A stretch of DNA of 64,000 nt, taken from positions 580,568,001-580,632,000 of the forward strand of contig NC_067399.1 in NCBI RefSeq assembly GCF_016432865.1, given 5' to 3'. This document shows, in pieces, positions 5,301 through 54,500 of the stretch. The position numbers and the translations under genes are program-made. A model generated the notes under the pieces. The model made no database searches. It saw nothing but the letters and a program-made list of their open reading frames with translations, and was not told where the DNA came from. Every line of letters starts with the position of its first letter. The first letter of the stretch is position 1. Source of the DNA: Antechinus flavipes (lineage: Eukaryota).

Positions 5301-7039
5301 AGACCTCAGGAAACTGGGAGGAGAGGAAGAAATAAAAGTCTTATAAAAGTCCTGAAAATGCTTAATAATTTCCATAAACTATTAATCCAATGATCATTAT
5401 TTAGTACTTTTCAGTGTATTTTCTATATAACTGTCCTGTGAATTGTGTGCCACAAGTATTATCCCCACTATTCAAATGAGGACCAGTCAAGAGAGTGTGA
5501 CTAACCCAATGAAACTCATAGGTATGTGTCCCAGCTAGGTCTCAAACCCAGGGCATCTGATGATATGACATTGTAATGCATTTTAATGGCACAAGAATTT
5601 TGTGCCCTTTTGAAGCCCTATAAAGTCCAAATTATACTGTTCCTTGCCCACTGTCAATTTCTGCTCTCCATTCTCCAATCTATAAATAGTTGGGAAGGCT
5701 CTGAAGACCCCAAACCAGCCCTAGGTTATTAATTTTGTTTGAGCAAAAGCTTCAAAGTGATCAGAATATAAAAGAGCAGGATTAGTTGGAAGGAACTTTC
5801 AACTTTGTAGAAATTTGTAGACTTCATTCCTCTCCCAGCTGTCTTCCTGCAATTTTTCCATCCTTACCCACACTCCCACTTTGGAACAGAATAGGACTAG
5901 GTTGCCCTGCAGAAGATGGAATAAGGTTTTGGTTCTGTTTGTCCCACAAGTGTCTCAGCATGGCCACCTGAGATATCCTGAACAGTGAGAGTGCAAAGAT
6001 CTGTGGACACATGCTTTCCACCTCCCAATGTTGTTATCCAAAAGTAAAATGGTACAGTCAAAAATATTGACATACGGGCGAGAACATGCCCTTGAGAAAG
6101 AAGTGTGACTCAGTGAGGAGAGAAAAGAGCCAGCATTGTGCATCAGGAGGACAGTCTTGGCTCTTTCCACTCATTCAATCAGAGTGGACACTTACGAAAT
6201 GTCCTCATCTCTTGTGGTGCTGTAAGGACCAAGAGCTGCTAAAATGTGATTCCCATACTTTAGAGAAGGCAGATAGATGCAAGAGCATTTGCTCTATCTT
6301 AATAGTGCCCTGTAATATGTTCGGTTGTTATACTAATGGAGATATAGAGAAGGGAAATAACATGGGGGTAGCAAAAGATCCTAAATCTAACAGTCATTAC
6401 ATCTCATCTCAGCTGTGATTCGAATTTGACTTTGAGAATCACTTCAAATGAAATGAAAATTTTATTAAGTCCTTACTAGTTCTAGGCTAGGAATACAAAT
6501 ACAAAAGTAAAACAATCCCTAACCTAAAATTGGAGGACACAACATACTTAAGGGACTCTAAAAGTCATTTATCTACTTAAAGGTTATTTGACCAGTAAAT
6601 ACCCTTCCAACTCAGAAATTGGGTGGTAGAAAGAAAGGTTACGGAGAGGCAAGTCTCAGCTTTTTGCCTTGGGGAATGTGCCCAGGGGACTTCAAAGTCT
6701 GACTTTCTATATGAGCCCCCTCCTCCCTTGCTTGCTAACTCCTCGACAGCGATAAAAGTAGGGGATGTGGGGAAGGAGACAGTATTCTACCATTCAGCCT
6801 GACTTTTCTAGCCACTACTAATTCATACGATAGAATTTTGAGCCATACGGGTCCTTGTGGATCGTTTAATCCACCCAGCCTCTGTTCTATAGGCTGGAAA
6901 ACTGAGGCTCTAAGAAGGGGAAATATCTTGTCTAACGCCAGCTAGCTAGGTAAAGCAGAACTAGATGGCAAATGACAAGGGGATGGAGAGTGTACACAAG
7001 TTTAAGATCTTGCTCCTCTCCCAACGACCTCTGCTAAGT

Positions 7040-7422
7040 CGTGGGCTGGGACACAGGGCTCCAGACCCGTAAGGGCTGTGCTCCTTTTCCCCGGACTAAG
7101 TCGGCTCCTGGATCGTTCCAGCCTCGAATCTCTTTGGACCAACTACCTGCGGGACGTGCACTCTCGCATTCGCCCCCCGCAAGTTCAGGAACCGCAGTAA
7201 CTCGTCATCTCTTTGCCGTTCCTTCCTAAAACCATCGGACCGGCCCTCTGGGCCTCTAGCTCAGGGTTCTGCCGGGAGATTTTGAGTATAGGACGCTCTG
7301 GGAGACGGCGATCGATTGAGCCGGTCTGACGGCTTTGCTAGGCGGCTCCTTAGCCTTCGTAGCTGCCGGAGGAGAGCACTGCGCAGGCGCAACGAAGACT
7401 GGCAGAGACTTCGGGGCTACAG
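7040..7422 (+). promoter_or_regulatory. FBXL15: FBXL15 CpG-island promoter and 5' UTR
   Basis: CpG-dense region that extends over exons 1-3. NRF1-like TGCGCAGGCGCA at 7380-7391. Divergent from PSD. Confidence 0.7.
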
Positions 7423-9241
7423 ATGGAGCCGTCCGGGGGGGAGCAAGAGCCGGGGGCCGTCAGGTACCGAGGACGGGAGGGGCCCAGGAAAGGAGACACC
7501 CCTCCCTCCTTCCTCCCTCTGCTAGGTCAGGCAGGCTGGGGAAGGGAAGAATGATGAAAGGAAAGGTCCCCAGGGAGAGAGTCCTATAGCCCCACACCAA
7601 AGGAATCTGGAGGAGACCACCGAGGGACACTCGTGGGGATATGGACGGGGGAGATGGAGGAACTATGGGGTCACGCGTGGGGTGAGGAGGTTTGTGGGAC
7701 CCTGCCCAAACCTGGGGGACTGCGTGAGGCGGGGGGGTAGGCAGGGTACAGACCCTTTCTGCCCCGCCCCAGGCTCCTGGACCTGCCGTGGGAGGACGTC
7801 CTACTCCCGCACATCCTCAGCCGCGTCCCCCTGCGGCAGCTGCTCCACCTGCAGCGCGTCAGCAAAGCTTTCCAGGCGCTCGTGCAACTGCACCTGGCGC
7901 GCCTGCGCAGTTTCGACTCGGCACAGGTGACTCCGCCCCTCCCTGCGGCCTCGGGGCGGGGCCTCGGGGCGGGGCCTGGAGGGGCGGGATGTGCGGGCGG
8001 AGGCGGGAAGGAGCACATCCCCTAGTCAGAACCTGGGTTGGGGTGTTGGGAATAAGGGGAGAGGAGGTGGGCGGGCTAGCGATGGAGGCCGGGTGCCCAA
8101 CCCGGGGCCCAGGTGTGAGCCCCGTGGGCACCTCCCCCAGGTGGGCCCCCAGGTTCCCAGGGCAGCCCTGGGCCGGCTGCTAGGTGACTCGGAGGGGCTC
8201 CAAGAGCTGTGTCTGGAGTCGTGCCGTGACTGGCTGTCCGATGAGGACCTGGAGCCGGTGCTGAGCCGGAACCCTGGGCTGCGGCGCGTGGGGCTGGCGG
8301 GCTGCGGGCGGCTCAGCCGCAGGGCCCTGGTGACGCTGTCCCTGAGCTGCTCGCAGCTGCGTTGCCTCTCACTTGCCCATTGCGACTGGGTGGATGGCCT
8401 GGCACTGCGAGGCCTCGCGGATCGTTGCCCGTGCCTAGAAGCCCTGGACCTCACGGCATGCCGGCAGCTCCGGGATACGGCTGTGGCCTACCTGGCCCAG
8501 CGCCGCGGGGCCCAGCTCCGATCCCTCTCCCTGGCAGTCAACGCGAACGTGGGGGACGCCACTGTGCAGGAGCTAGCCCGGTGCTGCCCGCAGCTCGAAC
8601 ACCTGGACCTCACCGGCTGTCTCCGAGTGCGGAGTGACGCCATCAGGTGCTGGGCCCAGGGACTGGGGCTACAAGGTGGGCAACACAGGGAACTTGATAA
8701 AGGACCAGGCTAACCACTAGACTGTCCAAAGTAGTGCAAGCCACCTCCCGTCAGGGGGTGTTGCAACAGGTGGAAGGGACCACCCTAGAGGGTACTCTCC
8801 TAGCAAGGAGATGGTGCTTTTTGAGGTGAGGCTTGTCTATGGTCATGTTATGAAGAGGCTAGACCTAGTGCAAAGTTCCAGAATAGCTCTACTATCTTTT
8901 GAGGGCTCTTAAAAGGAGTCTCTGTCTCTCCCTGGGCCTGTTAAACAGGGGGACTGGGCTTGATGACCCCAAAACCCCTCCTCTCTGTCAGGAGAGGCCA
9001 CACATCCTGGCCCTCACAGACCCCCTTTACCTGCCCCCCCCCCCCCCTCAGGACCCTGGCAGAGTATTGCCCTCGGCTGCGCTCACTTCGAGTACGTCAC
9101 TGTCATGATGTGGCTGAGTCTAGCCTGAGTGCCCTGAGGAAACGTGGTGTGGACATTGACGTGGAACCACCCCTGCAGCGGGCCCTGGTCCTGTTACAGG
9201 ATGTTGTGGGCTTTGCTCCCTTTGTCAACCTGCAAATCTGA
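7423..9241 (+). CDS. FBXL15: F-box/LRR-repeat protein 15 (296 aa)
   Basis: Exons 7423-7463, 7773-7926, 8141-8646, 9052-9241 total 891 nt in frame. [14 protein letters not shown] / F-box [13 protein letters not shown] / LRRs / C-terminus [10 protein letters not shown]. Confidence 0.97.
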
Positions 9242-15546: not shown

Positions 15547-16181
15547 AATTTTAAAGTTTGCAAATTGCTTTATATACATTAGATCCTCACAACCTCACTT
15601 TATGAGGCAGGTGCTATTATCACTTCTATTTTACAGGTAAGGAAACTGAGGATAATAGATTTAGTGATGGAGGATGGAGATCGAGAGGAAGATGGAAGTG
15701 ACCAGGACAATAATAATGATAATAGCAATTTAAGATTCGCATCTTAATTTAAGATGCCCTATACAAGCGTTCTCAGTTGGTCCTCACAATGACCTTATGA
15801 GGCAGACGCTATTATCACTTCTATTTTACAGATAAGGAAACTGAGGCTAATGGATTAAGTGATAGGAGGATGGAGGTGACTGGAATAATAATAAAGATAA
15901 ATAGCAATTTAAGGTTCGAAAATTGCTTTATGCAAGTCATTTCGTTTGATCCTCACAACCACCTTATAAGGCAGGTGCTATTATCACCTCTCTTTTACAG
16001 GTAAGGAAACTGAGGCTAATAGATTAAGTGATGGAGGATTGAGGTGACTGGAATAATAATGAGAAAAGCAATTTAAGGTTTACAAACTGCTTTACAAAAG
16101 TTATCTCATTAGATCCTCACCTCGTGAGGTTGTAGCTCTTATCACCCCATTTTACAGATGAAGAAACTGAGGCTAAGAGAG
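15547..16181. repeat. Tandem array of four MIR/CORE-SINE-derived units (about 157-195 bp period)
   Basis: The anchor (g/a)gaaactgagg recurs at 15641, 15836, 16005 and 16162. Flanks tcctcac..., ttatcac...ttttacag and the spacer gatggaggat..ggtgactggaataataat are shared between copies. Confidence 0.85.
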
Positions 16182-16249
16182 ATGACGGGCCGGAGAATGG
16201 AGGGGAGGGGGCTGGAAATGGGAGCCAGGAGAGGTGGGGATGGGCACAG

Positions 16250-16640
16250 TTTGGGGGCGGAGGGGTGCAGGGGCAGCGGAGGAAAGAGGCAGGCGACGCG
16301 GGCCTGCAGGCCCCAAGACCGCGCTCGCGCAGCGCAGAACGGGGGTCTCGGGCTCGCCGCCCATAGAATTTCGGGTCTCCCCGACCCCGGGCCCAGGCCT
16401 GGACTCCCGCCTCCGCTCTCGACGCGGTCTCCGGGTCACTGGGTCGGGTTTGGCCCCGCGGAACAGCGGGAACGAGACAGATTGGGGAAGGAAGGGGGAG
16501 GTCACCTGCTTTCCCGGCGCTGGCGCAGGCAGCCGCTCGTCCCGCGCAGCAGCGCAGTTCCCGCGCGCACCACCGAGAGAAGCGCGTCGTGGCCTAGAGC
16601 GGCCCCGTGTCGGCCATCTTTGATAAGGGAAGGGGGAGGG
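16250..16640 (-). promoter_or_regulatory. CUEDC2: CUEDC2 CpG-island promoter and non-coding exon 1 (about 16620-16506)
   Basis: CpG island, donor CAG|GTGACC at 16505, YY1 motif AAGATGGCCG at 16620-16611. The coding exon acceptor is at 12489. Confidence 0.7.
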
Positions 16641-19600
16641 GGGCGAATGCAGGGGGAGAGGGCTATCCTGAGTCTGACGTTATGGACTCAGACTTAGCCA
16701 CCTAGTGCAATCCGTCCAATTGAACGCGGGAAAACTGAGGTTCAGCCAGAGCAACAATGGTCCCCAGAGGTCAACACCCCCATTTGACATAGGGATACTG
16801 AGGCCCAAAGAGTAGTTCGATGGCTTAAGGTCACACAGGATGCTGAAAACACGCGAGATTAGAAGCCAGTTTTAAGACTCCAGATCCAGGGCCTGTTCCC
16901 TCAGGTCGTCTAGGCTGCCCCCCATCTCTGAGCCTCCGCTCCTCTCCTCTTTGTACTTAAAGTCCTTGGTGCTTGTTTTTCTGTCGTGTCTAACTCTTCG
17001 CCGCCCCATTTGGGGCTCCCATGGCAAAGCTGCTGGAGAGGTCCGCCATTTCCTTCTCCAGCTCATTTGACAGATGAGGAAACTGAGGCAGGCCACAGCT
17101 AGGAAGCGGGTGAGGCCGTTCCGTACCGGCCGCGCCGCCTCAGTGCCCGAAGGCGCCAAATCAAATCCAATTCCACGGATACCGGTTACTCGGCTGCTGT
17201 TTTGTCCCTGGTTCTACATAAGATAAGGAAGCTGGGCCAAAAACCTGGGGTTCGTGTTGATGGGATCTATGGGGTGGGGAGCAGATGACGGCAGGCAGGC
17301 ACCAAAAGCTGGGGCTCGGTCCGGGGAAGGAGCTTCCTCGAGGGTCTGGGCCAGAGGACGTAGGGAAAGTACTTTATTAATAATGTCTGAATCTAGCATT
17401 TGGGGTAGAAATTAACTCAAGCTGACCCCAGGGATCCTCCAAGGAAGCTAGAGATTCGTGCAAGGAATCGGTGGGACTTGCCCAATAGCTTGTGTTTTGG
17501 CACCCACTCAAATGTTATTGAATGTTTCTATTATCTCCTGATATTCCTAAGGAACCTAAAAATACCGACTTTGGGGGAAACTGCCTACGTGCAGATCAAC
17601 CAACTTGTACCCTTGTTTGAACACCTGCAAAGACTAGGAGTAAGGGGTGCCAGCCACACTTATTTCTGGCTCTGTGTCGCTTCACTCTGTTTGCCTCAGT
17701 TTCCTTATCTGTAAAATGAGCTAAAGAAGGAAAAGGCAAACTAATGCAGTATCTCTGCTACACAAAGCCCAAATAGCGTAATATATAACTGAAACAACCA
17801 AACAAGAACAACAACAAAAAAACCTCTGCCAAAACAACTTTTAAAAAATTCTTTCTAAAAATTTTAAAATGATTTTTGCATCAAGATTGATGCAAAACAC
17901 GGATGCAATGCACCATAAAAAGAAAATTTGTATTTAACGAGAAGGTGCTTTACACGGTACTTTTTAGGGTTTGTTTTTGGAAAAGTTATTACATTTGGAA
18001 CTATTCTGAAGCTGTTAATTTAAAAATGTTGCAGGTTTCACACGATCATCCTCCCCCAAAAAACTAGACCCAGAACTTTTTAGATTTTGGTTCTGTTCTC
18101 TGCCAACAAGGGGCCCAGAGTCAGATTCTCATCCTCCCTTTCTGTCTTTCCAGGCTTGCTTTCTTTGGGCTATTCTCTCAAAGCCAAATATAGAAAAGGG
18201 CAGAAGAAATGCTTGTTTCCTCTTCCCTTCCTCCCTACTGAAAAAGCATCAGTCCTTTCCCCACCTCTAAGGGCTGGGCTCTGAGTGCCTGGTTTCTAAG
18301 TCCTTGGGGCACTAAGGGCTGGGCTCAAATTGTAGGCTTCTCAACATTAGCATTTTTGCCAAGGCTGGAGCTGTATGAGTACAAACCTGTTTGAGCGGCT
18401 CCTAAAGCTCTGAGGAGGCTAACCTCCCCCACCCCCACCCCCACCCCCCCAGTTAAGGAACAAGGACTGGAGAAAAAAGATGTTTGCCAGAGAAGGTTTG
18501 GAGTCTGAGACACTGGTGAGTGTCAAGGTCAGGAAGCTTGCTACAATGACTCAGGGATAGGGTGTTTGGAGTTTCCAGCTCCAGTCGCTATGGCCCCTCA
18601 CTCTAGTCCCCTGGCTTTATTTCCTCTTTAAGAATCTAGGCTGAACAGCCAAAAAGTGTCCACTAGAATGTGAACTTGAAAACAAGAATTGTCTTTTGTC
18701 TTCTTTCTTTTTAAACCAGTGCTGAGCACAGTGCCTGGCACATAGTAGCCCCTCAATAAATATTTATTGACTGACAGATGAGAGAGCACTGGAGTGCCCC
18801 GGGAGAAGGAAAAGTCACCTTAGTCAGTCAAGTATGTTCTTGCAAGAGGAGGCAGGTAGGAAGACAGAGGACCAATTTCCTAACGTTGAGTAAACTGAGT
18901 CCACAAGCCGCCATCAGGAATGGTATTCCTCAAACTAAGTCCCACTTTCCCTCCTATTTGTTCCATTTAGTGCCCCTCCCCTTCCCTCCACCTAGACTTA
19001 CTGTTAGTGTGCCTGAATTATGTGAGCTGGAAGCTCCAGCATCGTTTAAAACAAGGAAGAGCAACGGAAGGGTTAACAAGGGGCTGCCAGTTTTGAACCT
19101 CAGCCAATATAGGGGCCCCAAGGAGGGGATAGGGACTTGGCCCCTAGCCTTCATCTGCCCCACCGATCTTCCCCATCCCCTGCCCCCCAGCCTGGCCTCC
19201 AAAGGTCTGCTCCAACCCCTCCAGTCACACCCCCACAGTACCTTAAGTGGCCTCTTCATTGCACAATCCCTAATGACGAAGCTTCTCACATTCCGAGAAC
19301 TTTCCCATTTCCTCTCCAGATGGCCCCATGGGTTCCCACCCCCACCAACCCTCTTTATCTTCCTCTCCTCTCTTCTTTCTATCCCCACCCCATGCTGCAG
19401 AGCTAGAAGAATAAGGGTTAAGAATAAACATTTTTTAACGCCACAGCTTCTAGATTGCTAGGAAAGTTGGGGAGAATGATGAGTGCCCCCCAATATTGAG
19501 TCTGAATGCAGAGATAACTTCTTCTGCCCTCTGATTCATCCTCTACTCCTAAGTTTCTGGTCGGTTGGGGAGATGGAACAGGGTATTGTCCTATTCTTTT

Positions 19601-20548: not shown

Positions 20549-20719
20549 NNNNNNNNNNNNNNNNNNNNNNNNNNNNNNNNNNNNNNNNNNNNNNNNNNNN
20601 NNNNNNNNNNNNNNNNNNNNNNNNNNNNNNNNNNNNNNNNNNNNNNNNNNNNNNNNNNNNNNNNNNNNNNNNNNNNNNNNNNNNNNNNNNNNNNNNNNNN
20701 NNNNNNNNNNNNNNNNNNN
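20549..20719. other. N gap (171 nt)
   Basis: Run of n. Confidence 1.
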
Positions 20720-20841: not shown

Positions 20842-21217
20842 NNNNNNNNNNNNNNNNNNNNNNNNNNNNNNNNNNNNNNNNNNNNNNNNNNNNNNNNNNN
20901 NNNNNNNNNNNNNNNNNNNNNNNNNNNNNNNNNNNNNNNNNNNNNNNNNNNNNNNNNNNNNNNNNNNNNNNNNNNNNNNNNNNNNNNNNNNNNNNNNNNN
21001 NNNNNNNNNNNNNNNNNNNNNNNNNNNNNNNNNNNNNNNNNNNNNNNNNNNNNNNNNNNNNNNNNNNNNNNNNNNNNNNNNNNNNNNNNNNNNNNNNNNN
21101 NNNNNNNNNNNNNNNNNNNNNNNNNNNNNNNNNNNNNNNNNNNNNNNNNNNNNNNNNNNNNNNNNNNNNNNNNNNNNNNNNNNNNNNNNNNNNNNNNNNN
21201 NNNNNNNNNNNNNNNNN
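20842..21217. other. N gap (376 nt)
   Basis: Run of n. Confidence 1.
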
Positions 21218-21270
21218 CACCACATCTGTCTGGGGCCCCAGCTAAGGGGGTAACTAAGCAAGAGAAGGGT

Positions 21271-21452
21271 GGGAATTCCCAATGGGAATTTGTATTCTTG
21301 TCGGGGTCTGGGTCAGGGAGGATTCTACAAGCAAAAAGCCCTCGCCTCCCACACTTTCCTCCCTTCTCAGAAGAGCAGGCTGGGGCAGGCAGAGGGCAAG
21401 GGGTGGGGTGAGGGATCCTATTTAAGAAGCCCTGTGTGAGCCAGGGCTCAGT
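21271..21452 (+). promoter_or_regulatory. Putative pri-miR-146b promoter: kB site, TATA box, Inr
   Basis: Palindromic kB site GGGAATTCCC at 21271-21280, TATTTAAG at 21419-21426, Inr TCAGT with the A at 21450 (31 nt from the TATA T). Confidence 0.6.
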
Positions 21453-21504
21453 GCCTGGCTGAGAGGAGACTGAGAATCAATCAAAGACAAGTTTGGGAGT
21501 CTCG
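21450..21504 (+). ncRNA. Predicted exon 1 of the miR-146b host lncRNA
   Basis: 55-nt ATG-free segment from the Inr to a strong donor TCG|GTGAGT. Confidence 0.5.
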
Positions 21505-22235
21505 GTGAGTGTCACCAGAAGGGACAGAGGCTTTGTCCATCCCCTCATGTCCTGCTGAATTCAGCTTTTGGGAGGTATAAAGGGTGGGAGAAGAGGGCCC
21601 TGCCCCCACTACTTTCTAGGGAAGGGGCTGCAGCACTACCAGCTGGGCAGGATCAGCTTCTTCCCCTAACTGAGGACCTTCCCCTGCCCTGTCCCCTGGA
21701 ACAGCCCTTGAAAGTGAAAGTATCTTTCTGGGAAATCCTTTTTAATAGAATCATAGAATATTAGAGTTGGAAGGGATCTTAGCAATCTAGTCCACTCTAT
21801 TATTTTCATAGCTAAGGAAACTGAGTCCCGAAGACAGTGAGTGTTTGACAAAGCTAGTAAGTCACACGGTTAACTGGGAATTGAACCAAAGTCTGTTTCC
21901 AAGTCACCATTGCTTCTTATGCGTCCCTGGCTCTTCTCTCACACTCTCTTTCTTTCCCCTCCCATTCTCTCCCTCACTTCCTCTCCTTGCTGGAGCTACA
22001 AACAGACAGGGATAAGAACAAGGTCCAATTCCTGGTGGTCTAGGACCCCTGTCAGGGCAAGACCTGCCCACCATCATTATGGGATCTCCATTGGCCCTAG
22101 GATTTCACTATCCTTCCGTAATGCTTCAGAGATAGATTCCAATATCTGTATCTTTCTGGGGAGAGGAGGGAAGTAATTTCTTTTCCTTCTCACAGTTCTT
22201 CTCTCAATGCTACCAGCTGTTCACTATCCTAGAGA

Positions 22236-22410
22236 GAGAAATCTTCACCTGGGGGCCATGAACTTGGTTGTTTTTAGGGATATTTTAATAATTGTATTTC
22301 AATATAATTGTTTTCCTTTTCAATCTGATGTATTTTATTTTATGCATTTAAAAACATCATTCTGGGAAGGGGTCCATGATATAGGAAAAAAGATAATTAA
22401 GAACTCCTGG
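22236..22410. mobile_element. hAT-type MITE fragment (same family as 25905-26135)
   Basis: Shares ttttatgcatttaaaaacat(c/t)attctg(g/a)gaag(g/a)ggtc(c/t)atg with the copy at about 26040. Confidence 0.55.
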
Positions 22411-22796
22411 TCAAAGACAAGCCCTTGGCTGGAACACCACAGTTAAGGTAAAGACCCTTCTAGGAGGAGGGGGAGTGAATCCTTAAATGGTGGGAGGCAG
22501 ATAGAGAAGAGCATGGAAAGTGGGAATGGGTGCAGAGTATGAGATCCTCCTCATGTTCTTCTACCATAGATCATGCTCCTCATACCTTCTCTGGAGAGGA
22601 CAAATACTTAATCCAGGCCAGAGGCTAGTGAACAAGTAAGAAACTCTGCTTTTCCAAAGTAAAGAAGGAAAACAACTAAAAGGGAAGGTATTCAATCTGC
22701 AGAAATGCTGGTGGCTACTAAACAGAGAAAGGAGCTGTAATAGAGATATGGTGGAGTTTATAAAATCTCCTGGTTTACAAATAAAGACCTTCTTCT

Positions 22797-22797
<1 letters not shown>

Positions 22798-22830
<33 letters not shown>

Positions 22831-22867
22831 AGAGAGAGAGAGAGAAGAAAGAAAGAAAGAAAAGAAA
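22798..22867. repeat. Compound A30-(GA)n-(GAAA)n repeat
   Basis: Seen directly. Confidence 0.95.
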
Positions 22868-23391
22868 TTACTCAGAACTTCCTGGAGGCAGAGGAATGGA
22901 GGCAATGACCTTATGAGGCCATCCTTACCAACTCACGGAATGCTATATTCTAGACTTCCTCCAAAGGGACTTTATTTAGGGGTAAGAGGTTAGAAAGGGA
23001 TGTAAGGTTTAGCTAAGTCTCTGGGAAAGCTGGAGCTGAACTCTGACCCACAACTTTACCCTTTTGGACCCCAGATCTACTTTTAGGATGGAACCAATTT
23101 CTATGGGCTCAGAATTTTTCAGTTTGAGCATTCATACCATAGAATCCACAAGGGATACCAAACCAGAGCTTAATTTTAGTATTTTATTGATTGTCTAAAC
23201 TTAAGAAAATGTTAGTAATTCACATTAAACTTAAAAGTGTGTCTTGGATACAATAATTTTTCAGAGAGTCTAGAAGCATCTTCCGCCTAAGATTAGTATC
23301 GTCTGTTCCTGCTTTTATCTGACCTCATATTTTTTTAACCAGTGTCTAATGCCCAAACGTGATGCCCTCGCTTGTGCCCACGCCCTGGCAT

Positions 23392-23464
23392 CTGGCTCTG
23401 AGAACTGAATTCCATAGGCTGTGAGCTCATGCAGATGCCCTAGGAAGTCAGTTCTGGAGCCCGG
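23392..23464 (+). ncRNA. MIR146B: pre-miR-146b hairpin (5p 23399-23420 UGAGAACUGAAUUCCAUAGGCU; 3p about 23436-23457)
   Basis: Exact mature miR-146b-5p sequence, a complementary 3p arm, loop GUGAGCUC as in the eutherian hairpin, and the syntenic position between CUEDC2 and C10orf95. Confidence 0.97.
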
Positions 23465-24079
23465 TGGCCTCAATCTGGTGGAGTCCAGATGCCTAAAGAG
23501 GCAAAGACACTGTATTAGGAATCGAATTGTGCAATACTCCCGTAAATCTGTCTCAGCAGCCATTTCCAAGGCTCTGGGTCAGCTCTACAATTCCTGGAGC
23601 CTTAGCTATTTCAACGACTAACTTGGACACAGATCAGTCTTTGCACCTTTGCACCTGTTTCCCCTTCACAGTGTTCTCTCCCCCATTGTTTATATTCTAT
23701 CCCATCCTTCAAGGTCCTGTCAATTTCTTCCTCTTCCAACGGAGGCAGGTAGGCCATAACGGTCAATAGAATGCTGGACCTGGAGCTGGAAAACCTGAGA
23801 CAAATTTGACTTTTGGAGCCACATGACCCTGAGCAGATCATTCAACCTCAGTCTGTTTCAGTTTTTTCAGTTGTAAAATATTGTAAATAGCACTTACCTC
23901 ACTGGTTGTTGTGAGAATCAAATAAGTTAATAAGTATACTCCATACAGAGTAAGAGCTTAATAAATGCTTATTCTTCCTTTTCTTCTAAAGAAGCCTTGC
24001 CTGATCATCTCAGGTCATTCTGGAATCTTCATCCTTTGGAGCTTTTAGTGATTCCCATTTAAGTGGAAATGAGAGCTTG

Positions 24080-24310
24080 TGCTCTCTTGCTCTCGCTCTC
24101 GCTCTTGCTCTCGCTCTCTCTTCTCTTTATCTCTCTGTTTCTGTTTTTCTCTGTCTCTGCCTCTGCCTCTCTCTGCCTCTGTCTCTTTTTCTGTCTCTGT
24201 CTCTGTATCTATCTGTGTCTCTCTTCTCTATATCTCTCTTTGTGTATCTGTCTGTTTTTGTCTTTGTCTTTCTCTGGTGTCTTTGCCTAATCTGTGCTTC
24301 CATCTCTACT
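24080..24310. repeat. Degenerate (CT)/(CTGTCT) low-complexity repeat
   Basis: Seen directly. It generates spurious Ser/Leu/Cys ORFs. Confidence 0.9.
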
Positions 24311-25904: not shown

Positions 25905-26135
25905 TGATTTTATGAATATTTCCCCTAAAGAGTCCATGCATAGATTTGGAGGATCTGTGAAATCAATGGGAAAAAAATGCATTTTTTTCAATATAATTGG
26001 GTTCCTTTGTAATTCTATAATATATATATATATGTATTCTTTTTTATGCATTTAAAAACATTATTCTGAGAAGAGGTCTATGGGCTTTAACAGTGTCCAA
26101 AGGGGTCAATAAAGCTGAAAAGGTTAAAGCCCCTT
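25905..26135. mobile_element. hAT-type MITE (same family as 22236-22410)
   Basis: Internal homology to the 22.3 kb copy, with a terminal aaaaggttaaagcccct. Confidence 0.55.
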
Positions 26136-40275: not shown

Positions 40276-41516
40276 GGTCCAAGCCCCTCACACTGCCGGT
40301 GCTTCACTGCATTGCCTCAGACCTGTGTCTGTATCTCCTCTGGAGCTGGGGGCAGGAGGAGAAAGGGTCAGGAATAAAGCTCAAAGGAGGCCTTGTTTCT
40401 CCCCGCCCTCCCTCCCCCCTCAGAGTTATCAATATCCTGGATACCAGAATCACAAGAGAGCTCAGATTTATGCTGCCCTCTCTCCAAGGGGCCAATAGGG
40501 CAGCCCTTCCCACCTCTATCCAACCACCCCAGGCTCACACCTCGTTATCTTCAATGAGACCACCCTATTCCCCAATCCACTAATTCAGCCCCACAAGCAC
40601 ACTCAGAGAAATGATCCCTTTTTACACAGAAGAGGAGCTTGAGAGCCTCTTCCTTCTTTTTCTTGAGGGAGGAAAAAGAACATTTGCCCTTTTCCTATTG
40701 TCCCACCCCTTATTTCACACCCCCTTATACTCACCAGTTTTTATGAGTCTAGCTGTGATTTCAGCGTGTGTGAGGGGAAAAGTCCTTGATACTGGCCTTG
40801 GAACTGTTATCCCTTCCCTCCTCCTTGTCTGGGGCTCTTTCCCTTATTCCCTTTGCCAGGTCATACTAAGCTTAGTCCCTCCCACTTTGCCTGTTACTAG
40901 GCAAAGAGAAACAGTTCTAAGCCTAGGTGTATGTCTATAAACACAGACAAGTATATATACACACACCTACAACTGGCTGGGACCCACCTCTGGGTTGATG
41001 TCCTAATTTCCCTACATTCCCCAGGAATTCCTTCCCTTGTCCTTTCATCCAGCACTTCTCTCCTTATAACCATCAGGGGTCAGCCTTTTTTTCACCCATT
41101 TAAGGCTTGGGGTTTTTTGGGGGGGGACTATAAGTTTTTGAAACTGATGGCTCTTTCCTCAGAGTGTTTTTAAAATCATAAAATAATTCATATAAGATCA
41201 CAAAAGAAACTAATTATACTGAAATAGAATTATCAAAATATTTTTAAAAGCAAATTCATTGACCCCATGCAACCTATCCAAGGATATAGAATTGATATTA
41301 TAATTTATCATTCTTTTGCCATATTCAAGGCTAGGCCTTTGTTCTTCAGCAGTTGGAATATCACCAACTTCAGATGATTTCTTCTTTTTCCTACCTATCA
41401 GACTTCTAACTCAGAGTACTGCTGGTAAAAAAAAAAAAAATGCTAAAAGAAAAAAGTGTGCAGGACACACTTCTTAAGTTTAGTTTGCATTACCAAAATT
41501 TTTCTCCATCATTTTT

Positions 41517-42360: not shown

Positions 42361-42369
42361 ACTCTCATT

Positions 42370-42465
42370 CTCTGTGTAGCTCTCTGTCTCTGTGTCTATG
42401 TGTGTGTCTCTCTCTCTTTCTGTCTCTGTCTCTCTCTATCCCTGTGTCTCTGTCTCTATCTCTTT

Positions 42466-42500
<35 letters not shown>
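42370..42500. repeat. Compound (CT)/(CA)n microsatellite
   Basis: Seen directly. Confidence 0.95.
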
Positions 42501-45574: not shown

Positions 45575-45745
45575 NNNNNNNNNNNNNNNNNNNNNNNNNN
45601 NNNNNNNNNNNNNNNNNNNNNNNNNNNNNNNNNNNNNNNNNNNNNNNNNNNNNNNNNNNNNNNNNNNNNNNNNNNNNNNNNNNNNNNNNNNNNNNNNNNN
45701 NNNNNNNNNNNNNNNNNNNNNNNNNNNNNNNNNNNNNNNNNNNNN
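45575..45745. other. N gap (171 nt) inside an L1 3' UTR remnant
   Basis: Run of n. Confidence 1.
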
Positions 45746-47199
45746 TACACCCCAAGTAAACCTAGGCAGTATGTGCAATGTTCCACATACATGGTTTCCA
45801 ACATCCATAAAGAAGGGAATTAGGTGCATTATTTTTCCATCTCTTCTCCAGGGTCATCATGGTCATTATAATTACACAGCATTCAGAGTTGGTTTTTCAG
45901 GTTTCAAGTTTTCAGGTTTTCAGGTTTGGTATTTCTTTCCATTTGCATTGTTTATACTGTTTCCCTTGTTCTGCCTACTTCACTCTGCAAAATATCATTT
46001 AAGCCTTTCCTTAATCCTTTTAAAAAATAAATTGATAGCTTTTGTTTCACATTGCCTTTACTTCCTCTGAATCTCTCTTCCTTACCTCTGCTAAAGAGTC
46101 ATCCTATATAACAAATTTCTTAAAGGAAGAGGAAGAATAAAAAAATCACAAAACAAATTAATATTCTAAAATAATCTGACAACATATTAAATTTTCCAGA
46201 TCAAGGAACCCACCCTTTCCTCAAAGGAATGTATGCGTGGGAAGTATCTTATCATATCTGTTCTTTGGGACTAAAAATGTTCATTGTGATTTTATAATAT
46301 CCATTTTAAACTTTGTGGTGCTTGATTGATGTCGTTATACAGATGTTGTTAGAGTGTACATTGCCTTCTTTGCTTTGCGTATTTCACTTGGCATCAGTTT
46401 CTTGTGGTTCTTTGCAGTCATCACATTGCCATTTCTTTTTGTTGTTATCATTTCATGACAGAACCATTGTGATCCCATTTGGGATTTTCTTGATAATGAC
46501 ATTGAAGTGGTTTCCATTTTTCAGCTCATTTTATAGAAGAAGAAACTGAAGCAAATGGGATTACGATGCTCATACAACTAGTAATTGTTTGATGCCATCT
46601 TTGAACTCAAGAAGAGGAGTCTCCCGGGAGTCACCAAGCCAGACATTCTATCCAGAGCGCCACTTTGTTGCCCTTGTAATTTCTAACAACACAGTAATTA
46701 TTTCACTTCATTCATGTACCACAGTTCACTTAGCCATTGATGAATCTACCTTATTCAGTTTTTTGCCACCACAAATATTTTATTGTATATAGGTCCTTTC
46801 TTTATGTCTTTGACTTCCTTGGGGTATATATGTCTAGCAGTGAGATGTCTGGATCAAAAGGCATGCACATTTGAGTAATTTATTTTGTTTTGAAAGCCTA
46901 ATCCCAAATTGTTTCCCTGATGGGTGGATCGATTTACGGCTCGGTCGGCAATTGATTATTGTGGTTGTCTCGCCCAAGACCCTCCTACAAGGGCTGGGAG
47001 CTCTAGTAATTTACTCATGTATACTAGAAGAAGGGATGCCTTAGTCTTAAGAGTTTGGGATAGGATCTAGTGGGGTCCCCTGCCTTTCCTGCAGCAGTTG
47101 CATCCTCAGGGAGACGTGTTGTCCAAGCCTCAGGTACTGCAGAGCAAGTCAAAAAAGACATATAGACCCAAGAAACTGCCGCACATCTCCTTCACGTAC

Positions 47200-47760
47200 C
47201 ACGTCACCTAGGGCAAGAGTCCATATTAAAGATGGCGGCGCTAGCGACAACTTGACCAGTCACCTGCCCCAATGTGCGATTCGAGGGGGACGGGACCGAG
47301 GTGGCGCTGAGCCAATGATGAGCCAAGGATGGGCGGGATTTTCGGAGAGGGGGCGGGGAAAGGATGTGCTGCGCGCAGGCGCTGTGTCCCTGCAGCTCCT
47401 GGTTGTCTCGGAGCTCTCGCAGTAGATTGGCATCGATCGCAGAGGTGAGCTCAAGAATTGATGGGACCGCGGCGGGGTCGGGCCGGGGTGCCTTGGCTCT
47501 GAGTTCCGGGCTCCGGCCGCTCTGGAAGGGCATGCTCCGGGGGCCACCTCACGAGAACACGGGGAGCGAACGCTCGGAAGTGGAGGCGGGAGGCTGGGAG
47601 GGGGGCTCCCCTGATGGCGGAGGAGCTGGCAGTCAGCGGTGCTCGGGCTTCGAGGGGAATCGGCCTGGACGCAGGACGCGGCTCTTGGGCTGGGGGATGC
47701 AGCCCCTTCTGGACGGAGTTTGTTTGGGGGGCCGTGCGGGACCAGAGGGGCGACCCTTAA
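47200..47760 (+). promoter_or_regulatory. MFSD13A: MFSD13A CpG-island promoter and non-coding exon 1 (donor at 47444/47445)
   Basis: YY1 AAGATGGCGGC at 47229-47239, CCAAT boxes, GC box, NRF1-like GCGCAGGCGC at 47373-47382, donor GAG|GTGAGC. Confidence 0.7.
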
Positions 47761-48114
47761 CCTCTCTTGTCTTCCACTTCTTCATTCGTAAAGTGAGGAG
47801 GATAACACTTCTGCTGCTCCTCTCGCAGCCCACCACTGCCTCCTTTGAAGTTATGATCAATTTTAGGAACGAATTAGGGAGAAGAGCAGCCTCAAGTAAA
47901 GAGGGCTGAAGTGAATGGGAATTGTTCCCCAGACAAGTGAGAACCTCAATGGGCTAGTGTTCCTGAGGTTGGAGGAAGCAGAGGAATATTGATTTGGGGG
48001 GGGGGGGAGGGAGGAGGAGAGTCCTGGAAACCCACCTGACGCCACCTCAATTGCTGTCTTGGGGAGTGGGAAGGGAAGGTCTCTCTCCTGCCTGAACGGA
48101 TTCGATCGTGCTGT

Positions 48115-48500
48115 CTGTCCCCGTCTCTCTCCTCTTACCCTCTGTCTCTCTTTTTCCTTCTGTCTCTCCTCTCTCATTCTATTATCTCTTTTCCTTCTGT
48201 CTCTGTCTCTGTATCTTTCTTTCCTTCTGTCTGACTCTCCTTTCACTCTGTCTCTCTCTTTTCCTTCTGTCTTTGACCCTCTCCTCTCATCCTGTTTCTT
48301 TTTCCTTCTGTCTCTCTCTTTCTCTTATCTCTTTTCCTTCTGTCTCTGCATCTCTCTTTCCTTCTGTCTCTGACTCTCCTCTCACTGTCTCTCTTTTTCC
48401 TTCTCTCTGTCTCTGTCTCTGCCTCCTCTCATTGTCTTTTTTTCCCTTCTCTGTTTCTGTCTGTCTCTCAGCCTCTGTTTTTGTCTGTCAGTCTCTCCTA
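48115..48500. repeat. Polypyrimidine minisatellite-like tract (recurring TTTCCTTCTGTCT)
   Basis: About 390 nt that are almost purely C/T on the plus strand, with a recurring 13-mer. Confidence 0.9.
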
Positions 48501-51503: not shown

Positions 51504-54500
51504 ATGGCAGGTCGGCCTCTGGCCTGGCTCTTCAGCCTGCCCACCGCTGTAGTCTATGGTTCATTGTCACTCTTTGTCTCCATTCTACACAATGTGTTTC
51601 TGCTGTACTACGTGGACACATTTGTCTCCGTGTACAAGATTGACAAACTGGCCTTCTGGGTCGGAGAGGTAAGTGTCCCATGAATTCCATAGCAAGCTGG
51701 GTCTGTGATGTAGGACTGGAATTGAGGTCCTCTGACTTCAGAACTGGTTCCTTTTCCACTGGGTCACGTGGCTTCCTATGACTAATCTCTCAAGCACTAT
51801 AGCTGTTCCCAAATCAGGAAGATTATAGCAGACACCCCCTTACAGAATCCTAGGAGCTTGTAACTGGGACTTTAATACTGGGAGCTGGAGAAAACTTGCC
51901 TCCAGATAGACCCTAGAGTGCCCTGGGTACTCCTCCCTTTGACTTGCCTCTCCCTCCCCCAAGCCTGCAGTGACTAGCCAGGCCATGCTGAGTGCTCAGA
52001 CTTAGACTGTATATATTCACAGCCCTTAATTTCCTGCTGGCCCTGAGCAATCAATCTGTGTTAGGACATTGCTATCAGTATAATGGTTCTTTCTTTTCCC
52101 TGTTTACAGACAGTGTTTCTCCTTTGGAACAGCCTCAATGACCCACTCTTTGGCTGGCTCAGTGACCGTGTCTTCCTCAGCTCCTCACCCAGGTGTGTGG
52201 CTTAGGGATGGATGGCTGTCAGAACTTGAAGTGGTTTTATTGATGAAATAGTCCAAATCCTTCATTTTACAGATGGGGAAACTGAGGCCTGGAAACAGGA
52301 AATAAAGGGACTTACCAAGATCACACAATTTAGTGGCTGAATTTCTATGGCTTCCTGTACAGGGTTTTCTCCACTATTCTGTGTTGCCTCAGTTTTTATT
52401 ACCTTTTGAGATCACCCTCTTGCCTAGGGGTGAGGGTCCCTTCTGTATTACTTGGAGTCAGAGGTACTAGAGGTGGGCTCCTAATCCTGAATGCTGTCTT
52501 TTCCTCCTGTTACCAATATGAATCTGGGGGAGGGAGAACAAAGGCAGGAAGGGCCCTATCTAACTGGTTAGTTCCTCTAGTCTCCAGACTAGATGATTCT
52601 TCCCCGTTTCCTTCCCTAATCACTTCCTGCAGGAGCAGGAGTAGAGAGTGGATTCTCTAAGTGGGAAAGCCTGGAAGGATTTGAGAAGGATCTGGGCCTC
52701 TGGTTTAGGGGATGGCTTATGGGGCTGAGACCTTCCCAGGGTCCCCGAGCCTCCGTGTTCCTTCTGTAAATGGAAGTTCAGTAAATTGTTCCCAGATTTA
52801 CATGAGGCAAAGGGGAGGAGATGTGGGCACACTGTGTGGGGATGAGTCTCCTGATTCCTTCCTCTGGTCCTTTTGCAGGGCAGGAGCTTCAATCCCAACC
52901 CAGGATGTGGTTCTGAGCAGGCTCCGGGCTCTCAGCCGGCATGGCCCATTGCTGGCTCTCGCCTTCCTGGCATTCTGGGTGCGGTGGGCACCTACGGGGA
53001 TGCAGTTCTTGCTCTGTTTGTGTCTCTATGATGGCTTCCTGACCCTGGTGGACCTCAATCACCATGCTTTGCTGGCTGACCTGGCTCTGTCTGCTCATGG
53101 CCGAACACACCTCAATTTCTACTGCTCTCTCTTTAGCGCAGCGGGCTCCCTCTCAGTCTTTGCCTCCTACACTGTGTGGAACAAGGAAGATTTTTCTTCC
53201 TTTCGTGCCTTCTGCGTGGTTCTGGCTGTCTTCTCTGGGCTTGGCTTTACTGGAGCCACATGGCTCCTAAGGCAGCGATTTGAGACAGAAGGGAAGACAC
53301 TGGGGGCCCTGCATTCAGCCTCAGAAGGGTAAGTGGTCCATTGTATTCCTAGCTCCCCTTTGATTCTCCACACATTTGTTCTGGGAATACAGAAACAAGT
53401 GACTTTGTGGAGTTTATATGCAACTGGGGAGGGATCTTATGGACTCAGGGAAGTGTTATGTAAGGTAAATTGAGATAAAAGAGTTAACTGACAGAAGGCT
53501 TCCCAGAAGAAGCAGCATCTGAGCTGAGCTTGAGGTGAGAGAAGGATGCTGAGAGATGGGGCTGAGAAGGAGGCAGAAATGGGCAGTAGCTTGTCTCTGA
53601 GGTTCCTGGCTCTATGACCTGCATTTTTTTTTCTTTTCTCCAATTGCCTTATCATTTCTGTTTCTTGATATGTTTTAGTGTTAAAGACACATTCATTTCC
53701 AAACCTATCCCTCCCCACCTCTCATATTCATTGGGCTAGCTTCTATAAATAAAGACGGGGAAAGTCCATCGGCATGGTAACTCTTTGACAGACTCAGAGT
53801 TCCCCACTTCAGTAATGAAGGGGAAAGAGATGCCTTTGTTCAGATCTTCTCTGGGCCAAACAAAGTCCTTATGATACACAGCATTCATTTTTGTTTTATC
53901 TTTATCTCAATTGTAGATTATATTTCTCTGGCTCTTCTATATGTCTTCCTCTGTTTTTCTAAACTCACATGTGTCATTCCACGGTAACATTCCCTGATAT
54001 TAATGTAGTTTGTTTAGCCATTCCTTACTCTATGGTTTTTGTTGTTCAGTCATTTTAGTCATGTATGATTCTTTATGGCCCCATCGGGGGTTTTCTTGGC
54101 AAAGATAGTGGCGTGGTTTGCCATTTCCTTCTCCAGCTCCAGGTTTTACTGATGAGGCAAAGTGACTTGCCCAGGATCATACCGCTAGTAAGTGTTTGAC
54201 CCAGATTTGAGCTCAGGAACTCTATCCCTTGCATCACTTGGCTGCCCACTTGTTGATCCACTGCATGCCCAATTCTTGGCTCTCAAAAAGGTTTTGCTAT
54301 TATTGCAAAAATCTTGCAAATATTTTTTAAACATAGGGCCCTTCATTCTGTCTTTGATTTCTCATTTGGGGGTTAGGAGTGGGAGTGGGTTTATCTTTAG
54401 CAGTGGCATCTTTGGATCAAAGGGTATGAGAATTTTTAGTCGCTTTTTTAAAAGCGAAATTCCCTAATGCTTTCCAATTCACAGCAGCTCTAACAGTGAA

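What the first reader, a model, noticed from the sequence alone, without database searches (positions are those of the whole stretch)
21271..23965. Complete two-exon, kB/TATA-driven host transcription unit for miR-146b readable from sequence
Seen: a perfect kB palindrome (21271), TATTTAAG (21419), an Inr exactly 31 nt downstream (21450) and a 55-nt ATG-free exon ending in TCG|GTGAGT (21504). These are followed by a branch point CTGAC (A at 23322), a pyrimidine tract and AG (23341-23342) only 49 nt before the hairpin, and an L2-derived AATAAA (23960). Known: the paralogue miR-146a lies in exon 2 of a spliced, NF-kB-induced two-exon lncRNA. Inference: marsupial miR-146b has the same exon-2 architecture, so splicing at this acceptor and Drosha cropping could compete. 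This would be an unannotated host gene and may reflect the ancestral miR-146 layout.
Basis: partly seen in the sequence, partly recalled or inferred. Interest (0 to 1): 0.7.

Follow-up and report, generated by a model that had tools for sequence, protein, structure and literature searches.

The report
Marsupial miR-146b promoter, splicing unproven
The stretch holds a genuine miR-146b hairpin and, about 1.9 kb upstream, what looks like the marsupial counterpart of the known eutherian miR-146b promoter; the proposed two-exon spliced host gene cannot be read from the sequence and no RNA reads could be obtained to test it.

Summary

The promoter part holds up:
- GGGAATTCCC occurs once in the 64 kb window.
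- The TATA block CCTATTTAAGAAGC (21417-21430) is identical to the top predicted promoter upstream of pig miR-146b.
- The pig NF-kB site lies about 146 nt upstream of that TATA box, against 148 nt here.
- A STAT-type TTCTCAGAA and a G-rich box lie between the kB site and the TATA box.

This is the orthologue of the eutherian pri-miR-146b promoter, whose start site lies 700-900 nt from the hairpin in human.

The spliced part does not hold up as "readable":
- The donor is strong, about one as good per 1.9 kb.
- The acceptor at 23342 is ordinary, about one as good per 105 nt. Better acceptors lie at 22195, 21619, 23074 and 23671.
- AATAAA occurs about once per 1.3 kb.
- An ATG-free 55-nt exon is unremarkable.
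- In mouse, the hairpin is annotated as intronic to a Tmem180 isoform. That is a rival layout.

Verdict: promoter supported, two-exon model unproven (about 15%). This scan holds no other note on this stretch.

The parts
21271..21280 (.). Perfect palindromic NF-kB site GGGAATTCCC. A second kB-like GGGAATTTGT follows at 21284-21293.
   Evidence: Unique in the 64 kb window. The pig promoter has a predicted NF-kB site about 146 nt 5' of the same TATA box, against 148 nt here.
21364..21372 (.). STAT-type GAS element TTCTCAGAA (TTCNNNGAA)
   Evidence: The motif occurs about once per 3 kb, so on its own it is weak. STAT3/STAT6 sites are reported in human and mouse miR-146b promoters.
21394..21414 (+). 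G-rich Sp/KLF/EGR-like box directly 5' of the TATA box
   Evidence: The pig Sp1/EGR cluster lies 10-40 nt 5' of its TATA box. A conserved EGR site lies in the human proximal promoter. Motif-level resemblance only.
21417..21430 (+). TATA block CCTATTTAAGAAGC (TATTTAAG at 21419-21426), identical to the pig miR-146b promoter prediction
   Evidence: against the 50-mer printed in PMC5940987, compared by eye. My estimate of chance for a 14-mer match between 50 nt and about 2.2 kb is roughly 3e-4.
21447..21452 (+). Initiator-like CTCAGT with A at 21450, the inferred transcription start
   Evidence: It lies 31 nt from the first T of the TATA box. The pig sequence has TGCAGA with its A 33 nt from the T. 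The start site is inferred, not mapped.
21450..21504 (+). Putative 55-nt non-coding first exon
   Evidence: No ATG. The exon status rests on the donor only.
21502..21510 (+). 5' splice site TCG|GTGAGT
   Evidence: 9.06 bits on an approximate PWM. 33 of 2878 + strand GTs score as high. Use not shown.
21735..21935 (-). MIR-type SINE copy (antisense) inside the proposed intron
   Evidence: Weak nhmmer matches to other places in the window. Identification as MIR rests on my own reading of the sequence.
22780..22827 (+). AATAAA, 12 nt, then A30: the 3' end of a retroposed element inside the proposed intron
23224..23229 (+). ATTAAA with a GU-rich downstream stretch, 175 nt before the mature miRNA
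   Evidence: A possible premature polyA site for an unspliced transcript.
23319..23342 (+). Proposed branch point CTGAC (A at 23322), T7 tract and AG
   Evidence: PWM 4.59 bits, about one as good per 105 nt. No AG lies between the branch point and the acceptor. G+C steps up from 0.27-0.35 to 0.50-0.57 at about 23340.
23384..23473 (+). mir-146 (146b-type) hairpin. 5p arm 23399-23420, 3p arm 23436-23457.
   Evidence: Rfam RF00691, 79.4 bits, E 2e-16. Fold.
23735..23985 (+). MIR-type SINE copy (sense). Its L2-related tail carries AATAAA at 23960-23965. A donor-like CAG|GTAGGC lies at 23749.
22180..22195 (+). Stronger alternative acceptor CTTTTCCTTCTCACAG
   Evidence: 12.58 bits, the best AG between the donor and the hairpin.
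23656..23671 (+). Strong acceptor-like site downstream of the hairpin
   Evidence: 10.63 bits. If it were used, the hairpin would be intronic.

Best explanation
Window 21271-21450 is the marsupial orthologue of the known eutherian pri-miR-146b core promoter. It reads, in order: kB site, STAT-type element, G-rich Sp/EGR-like box, TATTTAAG, initiator. RNA polymerase II most likely starts at or near 21450. It makes a non-coding primary transcript that runs about 1.95 kb through repeat-rich sequence to the miR-146b hairpin at 23384-23473, which Drosha then crops. The strong 5' splice site 55 nt after the start is probably recognised by U1. It is either spliced or serves to suppress the polyA signals at 22780 and 23224. 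Which acceptor, if any, pairs with it cannot be decided from sequence.

Shown: the motifs, the hairpin, and the match to the pig promoter.
Inferred: the start site, induction by NF-kB/STAT, any splicing, and the 3' end.
For: - Hairpin: (79.4 bits).
- Neighbourhood as at human MIR146B, from my own knowledge of the human locus: an FBXL15-like LRR ORF at 7991-8713 + and an MFS_2 (MFSD13A/TMEM180-like) ORF at 52712-53332 +.
- A 14-nt TATA block identical to the pig promoter prediction, with matching kB spacing of 146 against 148 nt and a G-rich Sp1/EGR cluster just 5' of the TATA box in both.
- It is the only TATA-like motif on the + strand between 21218 and the hairpin, and the kB palindrome is unique in 64 kb.
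- The human start site was mapped or predicted 700-900 nt upstream of the hairpin, next to an EGR site.
- NF-kB/STAT responsiveness of miR-146b is reported.
- The donor is about one in 1.9 kb.
- There is no coding potential downstream: the longest ATG ORF in 23343-23985 is 20 codons.
Against: - No RNA evidence of any kind.
- The pig comparison rests on one printed 50-mer and on tabulated site positions from a purely bioinformatic paper.
- The start-to-hairpin distance is 2-3 times the eutherian one. The difference is only partly accounted for by recognisable insertions.
- 376 masked bases directly upstream (20842-21217) hide what may be further promoter sequence or another start site.
- In some human cells, pri-miR-146b induction was not blocked by an IKK inhibitor, so kB dependence is not a given.
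Confidence: 0.7

Rival explanations
1. A two-exon lncRNA: exon 1 at 21450-21504, spliced to 23343, with the hairpin in exon 2 lying 56 nt from the acceptor, and polyadenylated after AATAAA at 23960. This shares the promoter of the best explanation.
For: - Strong donor.
- Branch point CTGAC 20 nt before the AG, a T7 tract and no intervening AG.
- G+C steps up exactly at about 23340.
- Splicing would remove AATAAA at 22780 and ATTAAA at 23224.
- The paralogue miR-146a lies in exon 2 of a two-exon gene.
Against: - The acceptor scores only 4.59 bits, about one as good per 105 nt. 22195 (12.6), 21619 (9.4) and 23074 (8.1) score higher within the same intron.
- The G+C step equally fits the edge of the conserved flank of a hairpin.
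- AATAAA is chance-level and comes from a MIR tail.
- No intron is reported for human pri-miR-146b in the papers held.
- No junction reads were obtainable.
Confidence: 0.15
2. Same promoter, wholly unspliced primary transcript, as the human literature implies. The donor acts only through U1 binding or not at all.
For: - The human start site is given as a simple genomic distance of 700-900 nt upstream, with no exon structure. The same source paper is cited for the two-exon structure of miR-146a.
- pri-miR-146b is routinely measured by qPCR next to the hairpin.
Against: - A 9-bit donor 55 nt from the start is unlikely by chance, about 5% per 100 nt.
- An unspliced RNA must read through AATAAA at 22780 and ATTAAA at 23224, which has a GU-rich downstream stretch.
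- Mouse has an annotated spliced first exon upstream of the hairpin.
Confidence: 0.3
3. Same promoter and donor, but the acceptor lies beyond the hairpin: either 23671 or the second exon of the MFSD13A/TMEM180 gene about 25-30 kb downstream. miR-146b would then be intronic, as annotated in mouse.
For: - Two papers state that mouse pre-miR-146b lies in the first intron of a Tmem180 isoform with a distal first exon.
- An MFS_2 ORF lies on the same strand downstream.
- A strong acceptor-like site lies at 23671.
Against: - Tmem180 mRNA and miR-146b are regulated independently in mouse macrophages.
- It is not shown that the mouse distal exon corresponds to 21450-21504.
- No marsupial RNA data.
Confidence: 0.2
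4. The real start site is elsewhere: in the masked stretch 20842-21217, at the CpG-rich region around 16-17 kb, or close to the hairpin. The 21271-21450 cluster would then be an enhancer or non-functional.
For: - CAGE-based predictors placed human miR-146b start sites 16.8 kb and 40 kb upstream.
- CpG-rich segments lie at 16001-17000.
- TATA+Inr pairs alone are chance-level.
Against: - The TATA block is conserved with pig.
- The human start site was confirmed by GRO-cap/Pol II data and 5' RACE near the hairpin.
- No other TATA-like motif lies on the + strand upstream of the hairpin.
Confidence: 0.12

Closest known systems
Eutherian pri-miR-146b promoter and primary transcript (human start site by 5' RACE, Taganov 2006 as cited in PMC3721471 and PMC5737662; pig prediction in PMC5940987)
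   Same: - Same miRNA and same gene neighbourhood.
- Identical 14-nt TATA block.
- kB site about 146-148 nt upstream of the TATA box.
- G-rich Sp/EGR box beside the TATA box, and STAT-type sites.
   Different: - The start-to-hairpin distance is about 1.95 kb here, against about 0.65 kb in pig and 0.7-0.9 kb in human. The extra length includes MIR-type and A-tailed insertions.
- No experimental mapping exists for the marsupial.
miR-146a host gene LOC285628 (MIR3142HG): two exons about 16 kb apart, miRNA in exon 2, NF-kB driven (PMC7202298; PMC3241639)
   Same: - Paralogous miRNA.
- kB-bearing promoter.
- Short non-coding first exon followed by a consensus donor, if that donor is used.
   Different: - Splicing is not shown here.
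- The proposed intron is 1.8 kb, not 16 kb.
- The proposed acceptor is weak.
Mouse Tmem180/Mfsd13a isoform with a distal first exon (PMC2965114; PMC5264274)
   Same: A spliced first exon upstream of miR-146b on the same strand as the downstream MFS gene.
   Different: - The miRNA is intronic there, not exonic.
- Correspondence of the exons was not tested.

Membership tests
mir-146 microRNA precursor (Rfam RF00691), 146b type | Match to the covariance model above the gathering score | tested here: met
   79.4 bits against 50, E 2e-16, full length 1-90.
mir-146 microRNA precursor (Rfam RF00691), 146b type | 146b-type mature sequence and MIR146B neighbourhood | tested here: met
   - The 5p arm reads ...TTCCATAGGCT, as in the pig miR-146b sequence printed.
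- FBXL15-like and MFS_2 ORFs flank it.
- CUEDC2 was not detected by a crude ORF/Pfam scan.
Orthologue of the eutherian pri-miR-146b promoter | Sequence conservation of the core promoter | tested here: met
   14-nt identity at the TATA block with the pig 50-mer, and about equal kB-to-TATA spacing. Only one eutherian fragment was available.
Orthologue of the eutherian pri-miR-146b promoter | Transcription start mapped at the site | not testable with these tools
Orthologue of the eutherian pri-miR-146b promoter | Induction through NF-kB/STAT/EGR | not testable with these tools
   Motifs are present. Function needs reporter or ChIP assays.
Spliced lncRNA host with exonic miRNA (miR-146a/LOC285628 type) | Exon-exon junction in RNA | not testable with these tools
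   No reads. The joined exon model was not built or searched.
Spliced lncRNA host with exonic miRNA (miR-146a/LOC285628 type) | Consensus 5' splice site after a short first exon | tested here: met
   TCG|GTGAGT, 9.06 bits, top 1.2% of + strand GTs.
Spliced lncRNA host with exonic miRNA (miR-146a/LOC285628 type) | A distinguished 3' splice site upstream of the hairpin | tested here: inconclusive
   A branch point, T7 tract and AG are present, but the site scores 4.59 bits. 600 + strand AGs score as well, and several better ones lie nearby.
Spliced lncRNA host with exonic miRNA (miR-146a/LOC285628 type) | PolyA site that defines the last exon | tested here: inconclusive
   AATAAA at 23960 has a U-rich downstream stretch. 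The hexamer occurs about once per 1.3 kb and lies in a repeat tail.

The most novel reading that the evidence does not exclude
Marsupial miR-146b is exonic. It sits 56 nt downstream of a used 3' splice site in a two-exon, kB-driven lncRNA that mirrors the miR-146a host. The exon-2 layout would then predate the 146a/146b duplication and would have been lost or remodelled in eutherians. Splicing and Drosha cropping would compete on the same 56-nt flank.
Probability: 0.15. Interest if true: 0.45.

Novelty: new member of a known kind. Interest (0 to 1): 0.25.

Why it matters
[quoted passage not shown] A TATA/kB core shared by a marsupial and a eutherian (pig) implies the miR-146b promoter is at least as old as the therian ancestor, with the kB site part of the ancestral design. 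If the spliced exon-2 layout were confirmed, it would link the gene structures of the two paralogues. It would also give a natural case of a 3' splice site within about 56 nt of a Drosha cut. As it stands, the promoter is an expected orthologue and the gene model is a hypothesis.

Tried and rejected
- **Reads.** After, no letters of that stretch went to any pattern, collection, paper or findings search. Only local folding, composition, tandem-repeat and script analyses of the window were run on it.
- **Papers not held.** Taganov 2006, Curtale 2013, Xiang 2014 and Shi 2014. The human transcript structure is therefore known only second-hand.
- **Repeat detection.** Self-BLAST of 21218-24300 against the window found only the A-run, a repeat at 22268-22378 and a CT-rich array. 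nhmmer gave only weak support for the two MIR-type copies. No repeat library was available.
- **CUEDC2.** An ORF/Pfam scan for CUEDC2 on the minus strand at 9-17 kb found nothing, probably because the exons are small.
- **Marsupial literature.** Nothing relevant on miR-146b in marsupials.
- **Earlier notes.** They held only this same finding.
- **Script machine.** It was lost, so CpG positions were not tabulated. composition_profile was used instead.
- **Rejected as evidence.** The ATG-free first exon and the AATAAA, both at chance level.
- **Spliced model.** The spliced (joined) exon model was not assembled or searched.
- **Masked stretches.** The N stretches were left untouched.

Full report
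**Observation.**
- GGGAATTCCC at 21271-21280.
- TATTTAAG at 21419-21426.
- CTCAGT with its A at 21450, 31 nt from the first T of the TATA box.
- A 55-nt ATG-free stretch up to 21504.
- TCG|GTGAGT.
- CTGAC with its A at 23322, a T7 tract and AG at 23341-23342.
- AATAAA at 23960.

Rfam places a full-length mir-146 hairpin at 23384-23473 on the + strand (79.4 bits, gathering score 50). It folds as a canonical stem. The 5p arm begins at 23399 and is of the 146b type. It matches the pig miR-146b mature sequence printed in PMC5940987. An FBXL15-like LRR ORF lies at 7991-8713 + and an MFS_2 ORF at 52712-53332 +. From my own knowledge, human MIR146B has the same neighbours. CUEDC2 was not picked up by a crude scan.

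**What exceeds chance.**
- The kB palindrome is the only one in 64 kb. kB-consensus sites number 14 against 5.6 in shuffles.
- On an approximate splice-site PWM, built from textbook frequencies I recalled, the donor scores 9.06 bits. 33 of 2878 + strand GTs reach that score, about one per 1.9 kb. An equal one lies at 21408, upstream of the start.
- TATA+Inr pairs occur 8 times in the window against 3.2 expected.
- The acceptor scores 4.59 bits, matched by 600 of 4869 + strand AGs. It is beaten nearby by 22195 (12.6), 21619 (9.4), 23074 (8.1) and, beyond the hairpin, 23671 (10.6).
- AATAAA occurs 48 times on the + strand.
- A 55-nt stretch without ATG is expected about half the time.

**The promoter.** The decisive evidence came from a paper.
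- PMC5940987 analysed 2 kb upstream of pig pre-miR-146b. It prints the best neural-network promoter, at positions 1335-1385, with the precursor starting at 2001.
- That 50-mer shares the 14-mer CCTATTTAAGAAGC with window 21417-21430. I made the comparison by eye. By my estimate, chance for such a match is about 3e-4.
- The pig initiator-like TGCAGA has its A 33 nt from the TATA T, against 31 nt here.
- The same paper lists an NF-kB site at 1199, about 146 nt before the pig TATA box. The window's site is 148 nt before its own.
- It also lists an Sp1/EGR cluster 10-40 nt before the TATA box. The window has GGGCAAGGGGTGGGGTGAGGG at 21394-21414.
- A TTCTCAGAA element of STAT type lies at 21364.

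In human, the pri-miR-146b start site is reported as follows:
- About 700 nt upstream of the mature sequence, next to a conserved EGR site (PMC3721471).
- 813 nt upstream of the precursor by miRStart, "quite near the verified one" (PMC3241639).
- About 900 nt upstream by GRO-cap/Pol II data, validated by 5' RACE (PMC5737662).

Functional NF-kB and STAT sites are reported for the human and mouse promoters. I therefore read 21271-21450 as the marsupial orthologue of a known promoter. The start at 21450 is an inference.

**The longer distance.** Here the start lies about 1,950 nt from the mature miRNA, against about 650 in pig and 700-900 in human. The interval contains several elements:
- An antisense MIR-type copy at 21735-21935.
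- A repeat with two other copies in the window, at 22230-22420.
- The 3' end of an A-tailed retroposon: AATAAA at 22780 followed by A30 at 22798-22827 and GA/GAAA microsatellites.

An unspliced RNA would have to read through that AATAAA and through ATTAAA at 23224, which has a GU-rich downstream stretch. That is a modest argument that the donor matters, either by splicing or by U1-mediated suppression of premature cleavage. This step is inference.

**The gene model.**
- The proposed acceptor has a plausible branch point, no intervening AG, and coincides with a rise in G+C from 0.27-0.35 to 0.50-0.57.
- Such a rise is also what the conserved flank of a hairpin would give, and sequence scoring does not single the site out.
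- The AATAAA at 23960 lies in the L2-related tail of a sense MIR-type copy at 23735-23985. This is my own reading, with weak nhmmer support.
- The putative exon 2 has no ORF longer than 20 codons.
- Two papers state that mouse pre-miR-146b lies in the first intron of a Tmem180 isoform with a distal first exon, although the two are regulated independently. That gives a concrete rival layout: the same donor, an acceptor beyond the hairpin, and an intronic miRNA.
- The statement about miR-146a (exon 2 of LOC285628, exons about 16 kb apart) is correct.

**What could not be done.**
- No eukaryotic genome collection is at hand, so conservation of the donor and acceptor is untested.
- The masked stretches 20549-20719 and 20842-21217, directly upstream of the kB site, were left alone. 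They may hide further promoter sequence.
- The joined exon model was not built or searched.
- The script machine was lost.

**Verdict.**
- Promoter: supported, about 0.7. It is the expected orthologue of a known element.
- Donor use: plausible.
- The exact two-exon model: about 0.15.
- Unspliced transcript: about 0.3.
- Intronic layout: about 0.2.
- Start site elsewhere: about 0.12.

The three splicing states share the promoter of the best explanation. Novelty is low for the promoter. The exon-2 idea remains a testable hypothesis of moderate interest.

Noticed in passing
window 20549-20719, 20842-21217, 45575-45745: Three N runs of 171, 376 and 171 bases. Two of them lie directly upstream of the kB site, so up to about 550 bases of possible promoter or enhancer sequence are hidden.
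   Followed up: no
window 22780-22865: AATAAA, 12 nt, A30, then (GA)n and (GAAA)n: the tail of a + strand retroposed element inside the proposed intron. No clear target-site duplication was found, only one 9-mer.
   Followed up: partly
window 22230-22420; copies at 41142-41270 (-) and 25984-26084 (+): An AT-rich interspersed repeat with three copies in the window. Family not identified.
   Followed up: partly
window 24084-24276; similar arrays at 42362-42466 and 48114-48496: CT-rich tandem arrays (units CTCTCG and TCTCTG) that recur at three places in the window.
   Followed up: no
window 7001-9000, 16001-17000, 47001-48000: CpG-rich segments (observed/expected 0.48-0.74) in an otherwise CpG-poor window. 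They are likely promoters of FBXL15, of a gene around 16-17 kb (CUEDC2 expected, not confirmed) and of MFSD13A. By contrast, the miR-146b promoter is CpG-poor (0.12).
   Followed up: no
window 23749: A donor-like CAG|GTAGGC (9.5 bits) in the head of the MIR-type copy, 276 nt after the hairpin. If it were used, the hairpin would lie in an internal exon.
   Followed up: no
window 23343-23383: Three CpGs within about 40 nt just 5' of the hairpin, in a CpG-depleted region, read. This suggests a constrained flank of the pri-miRNA.
   Followed up: no
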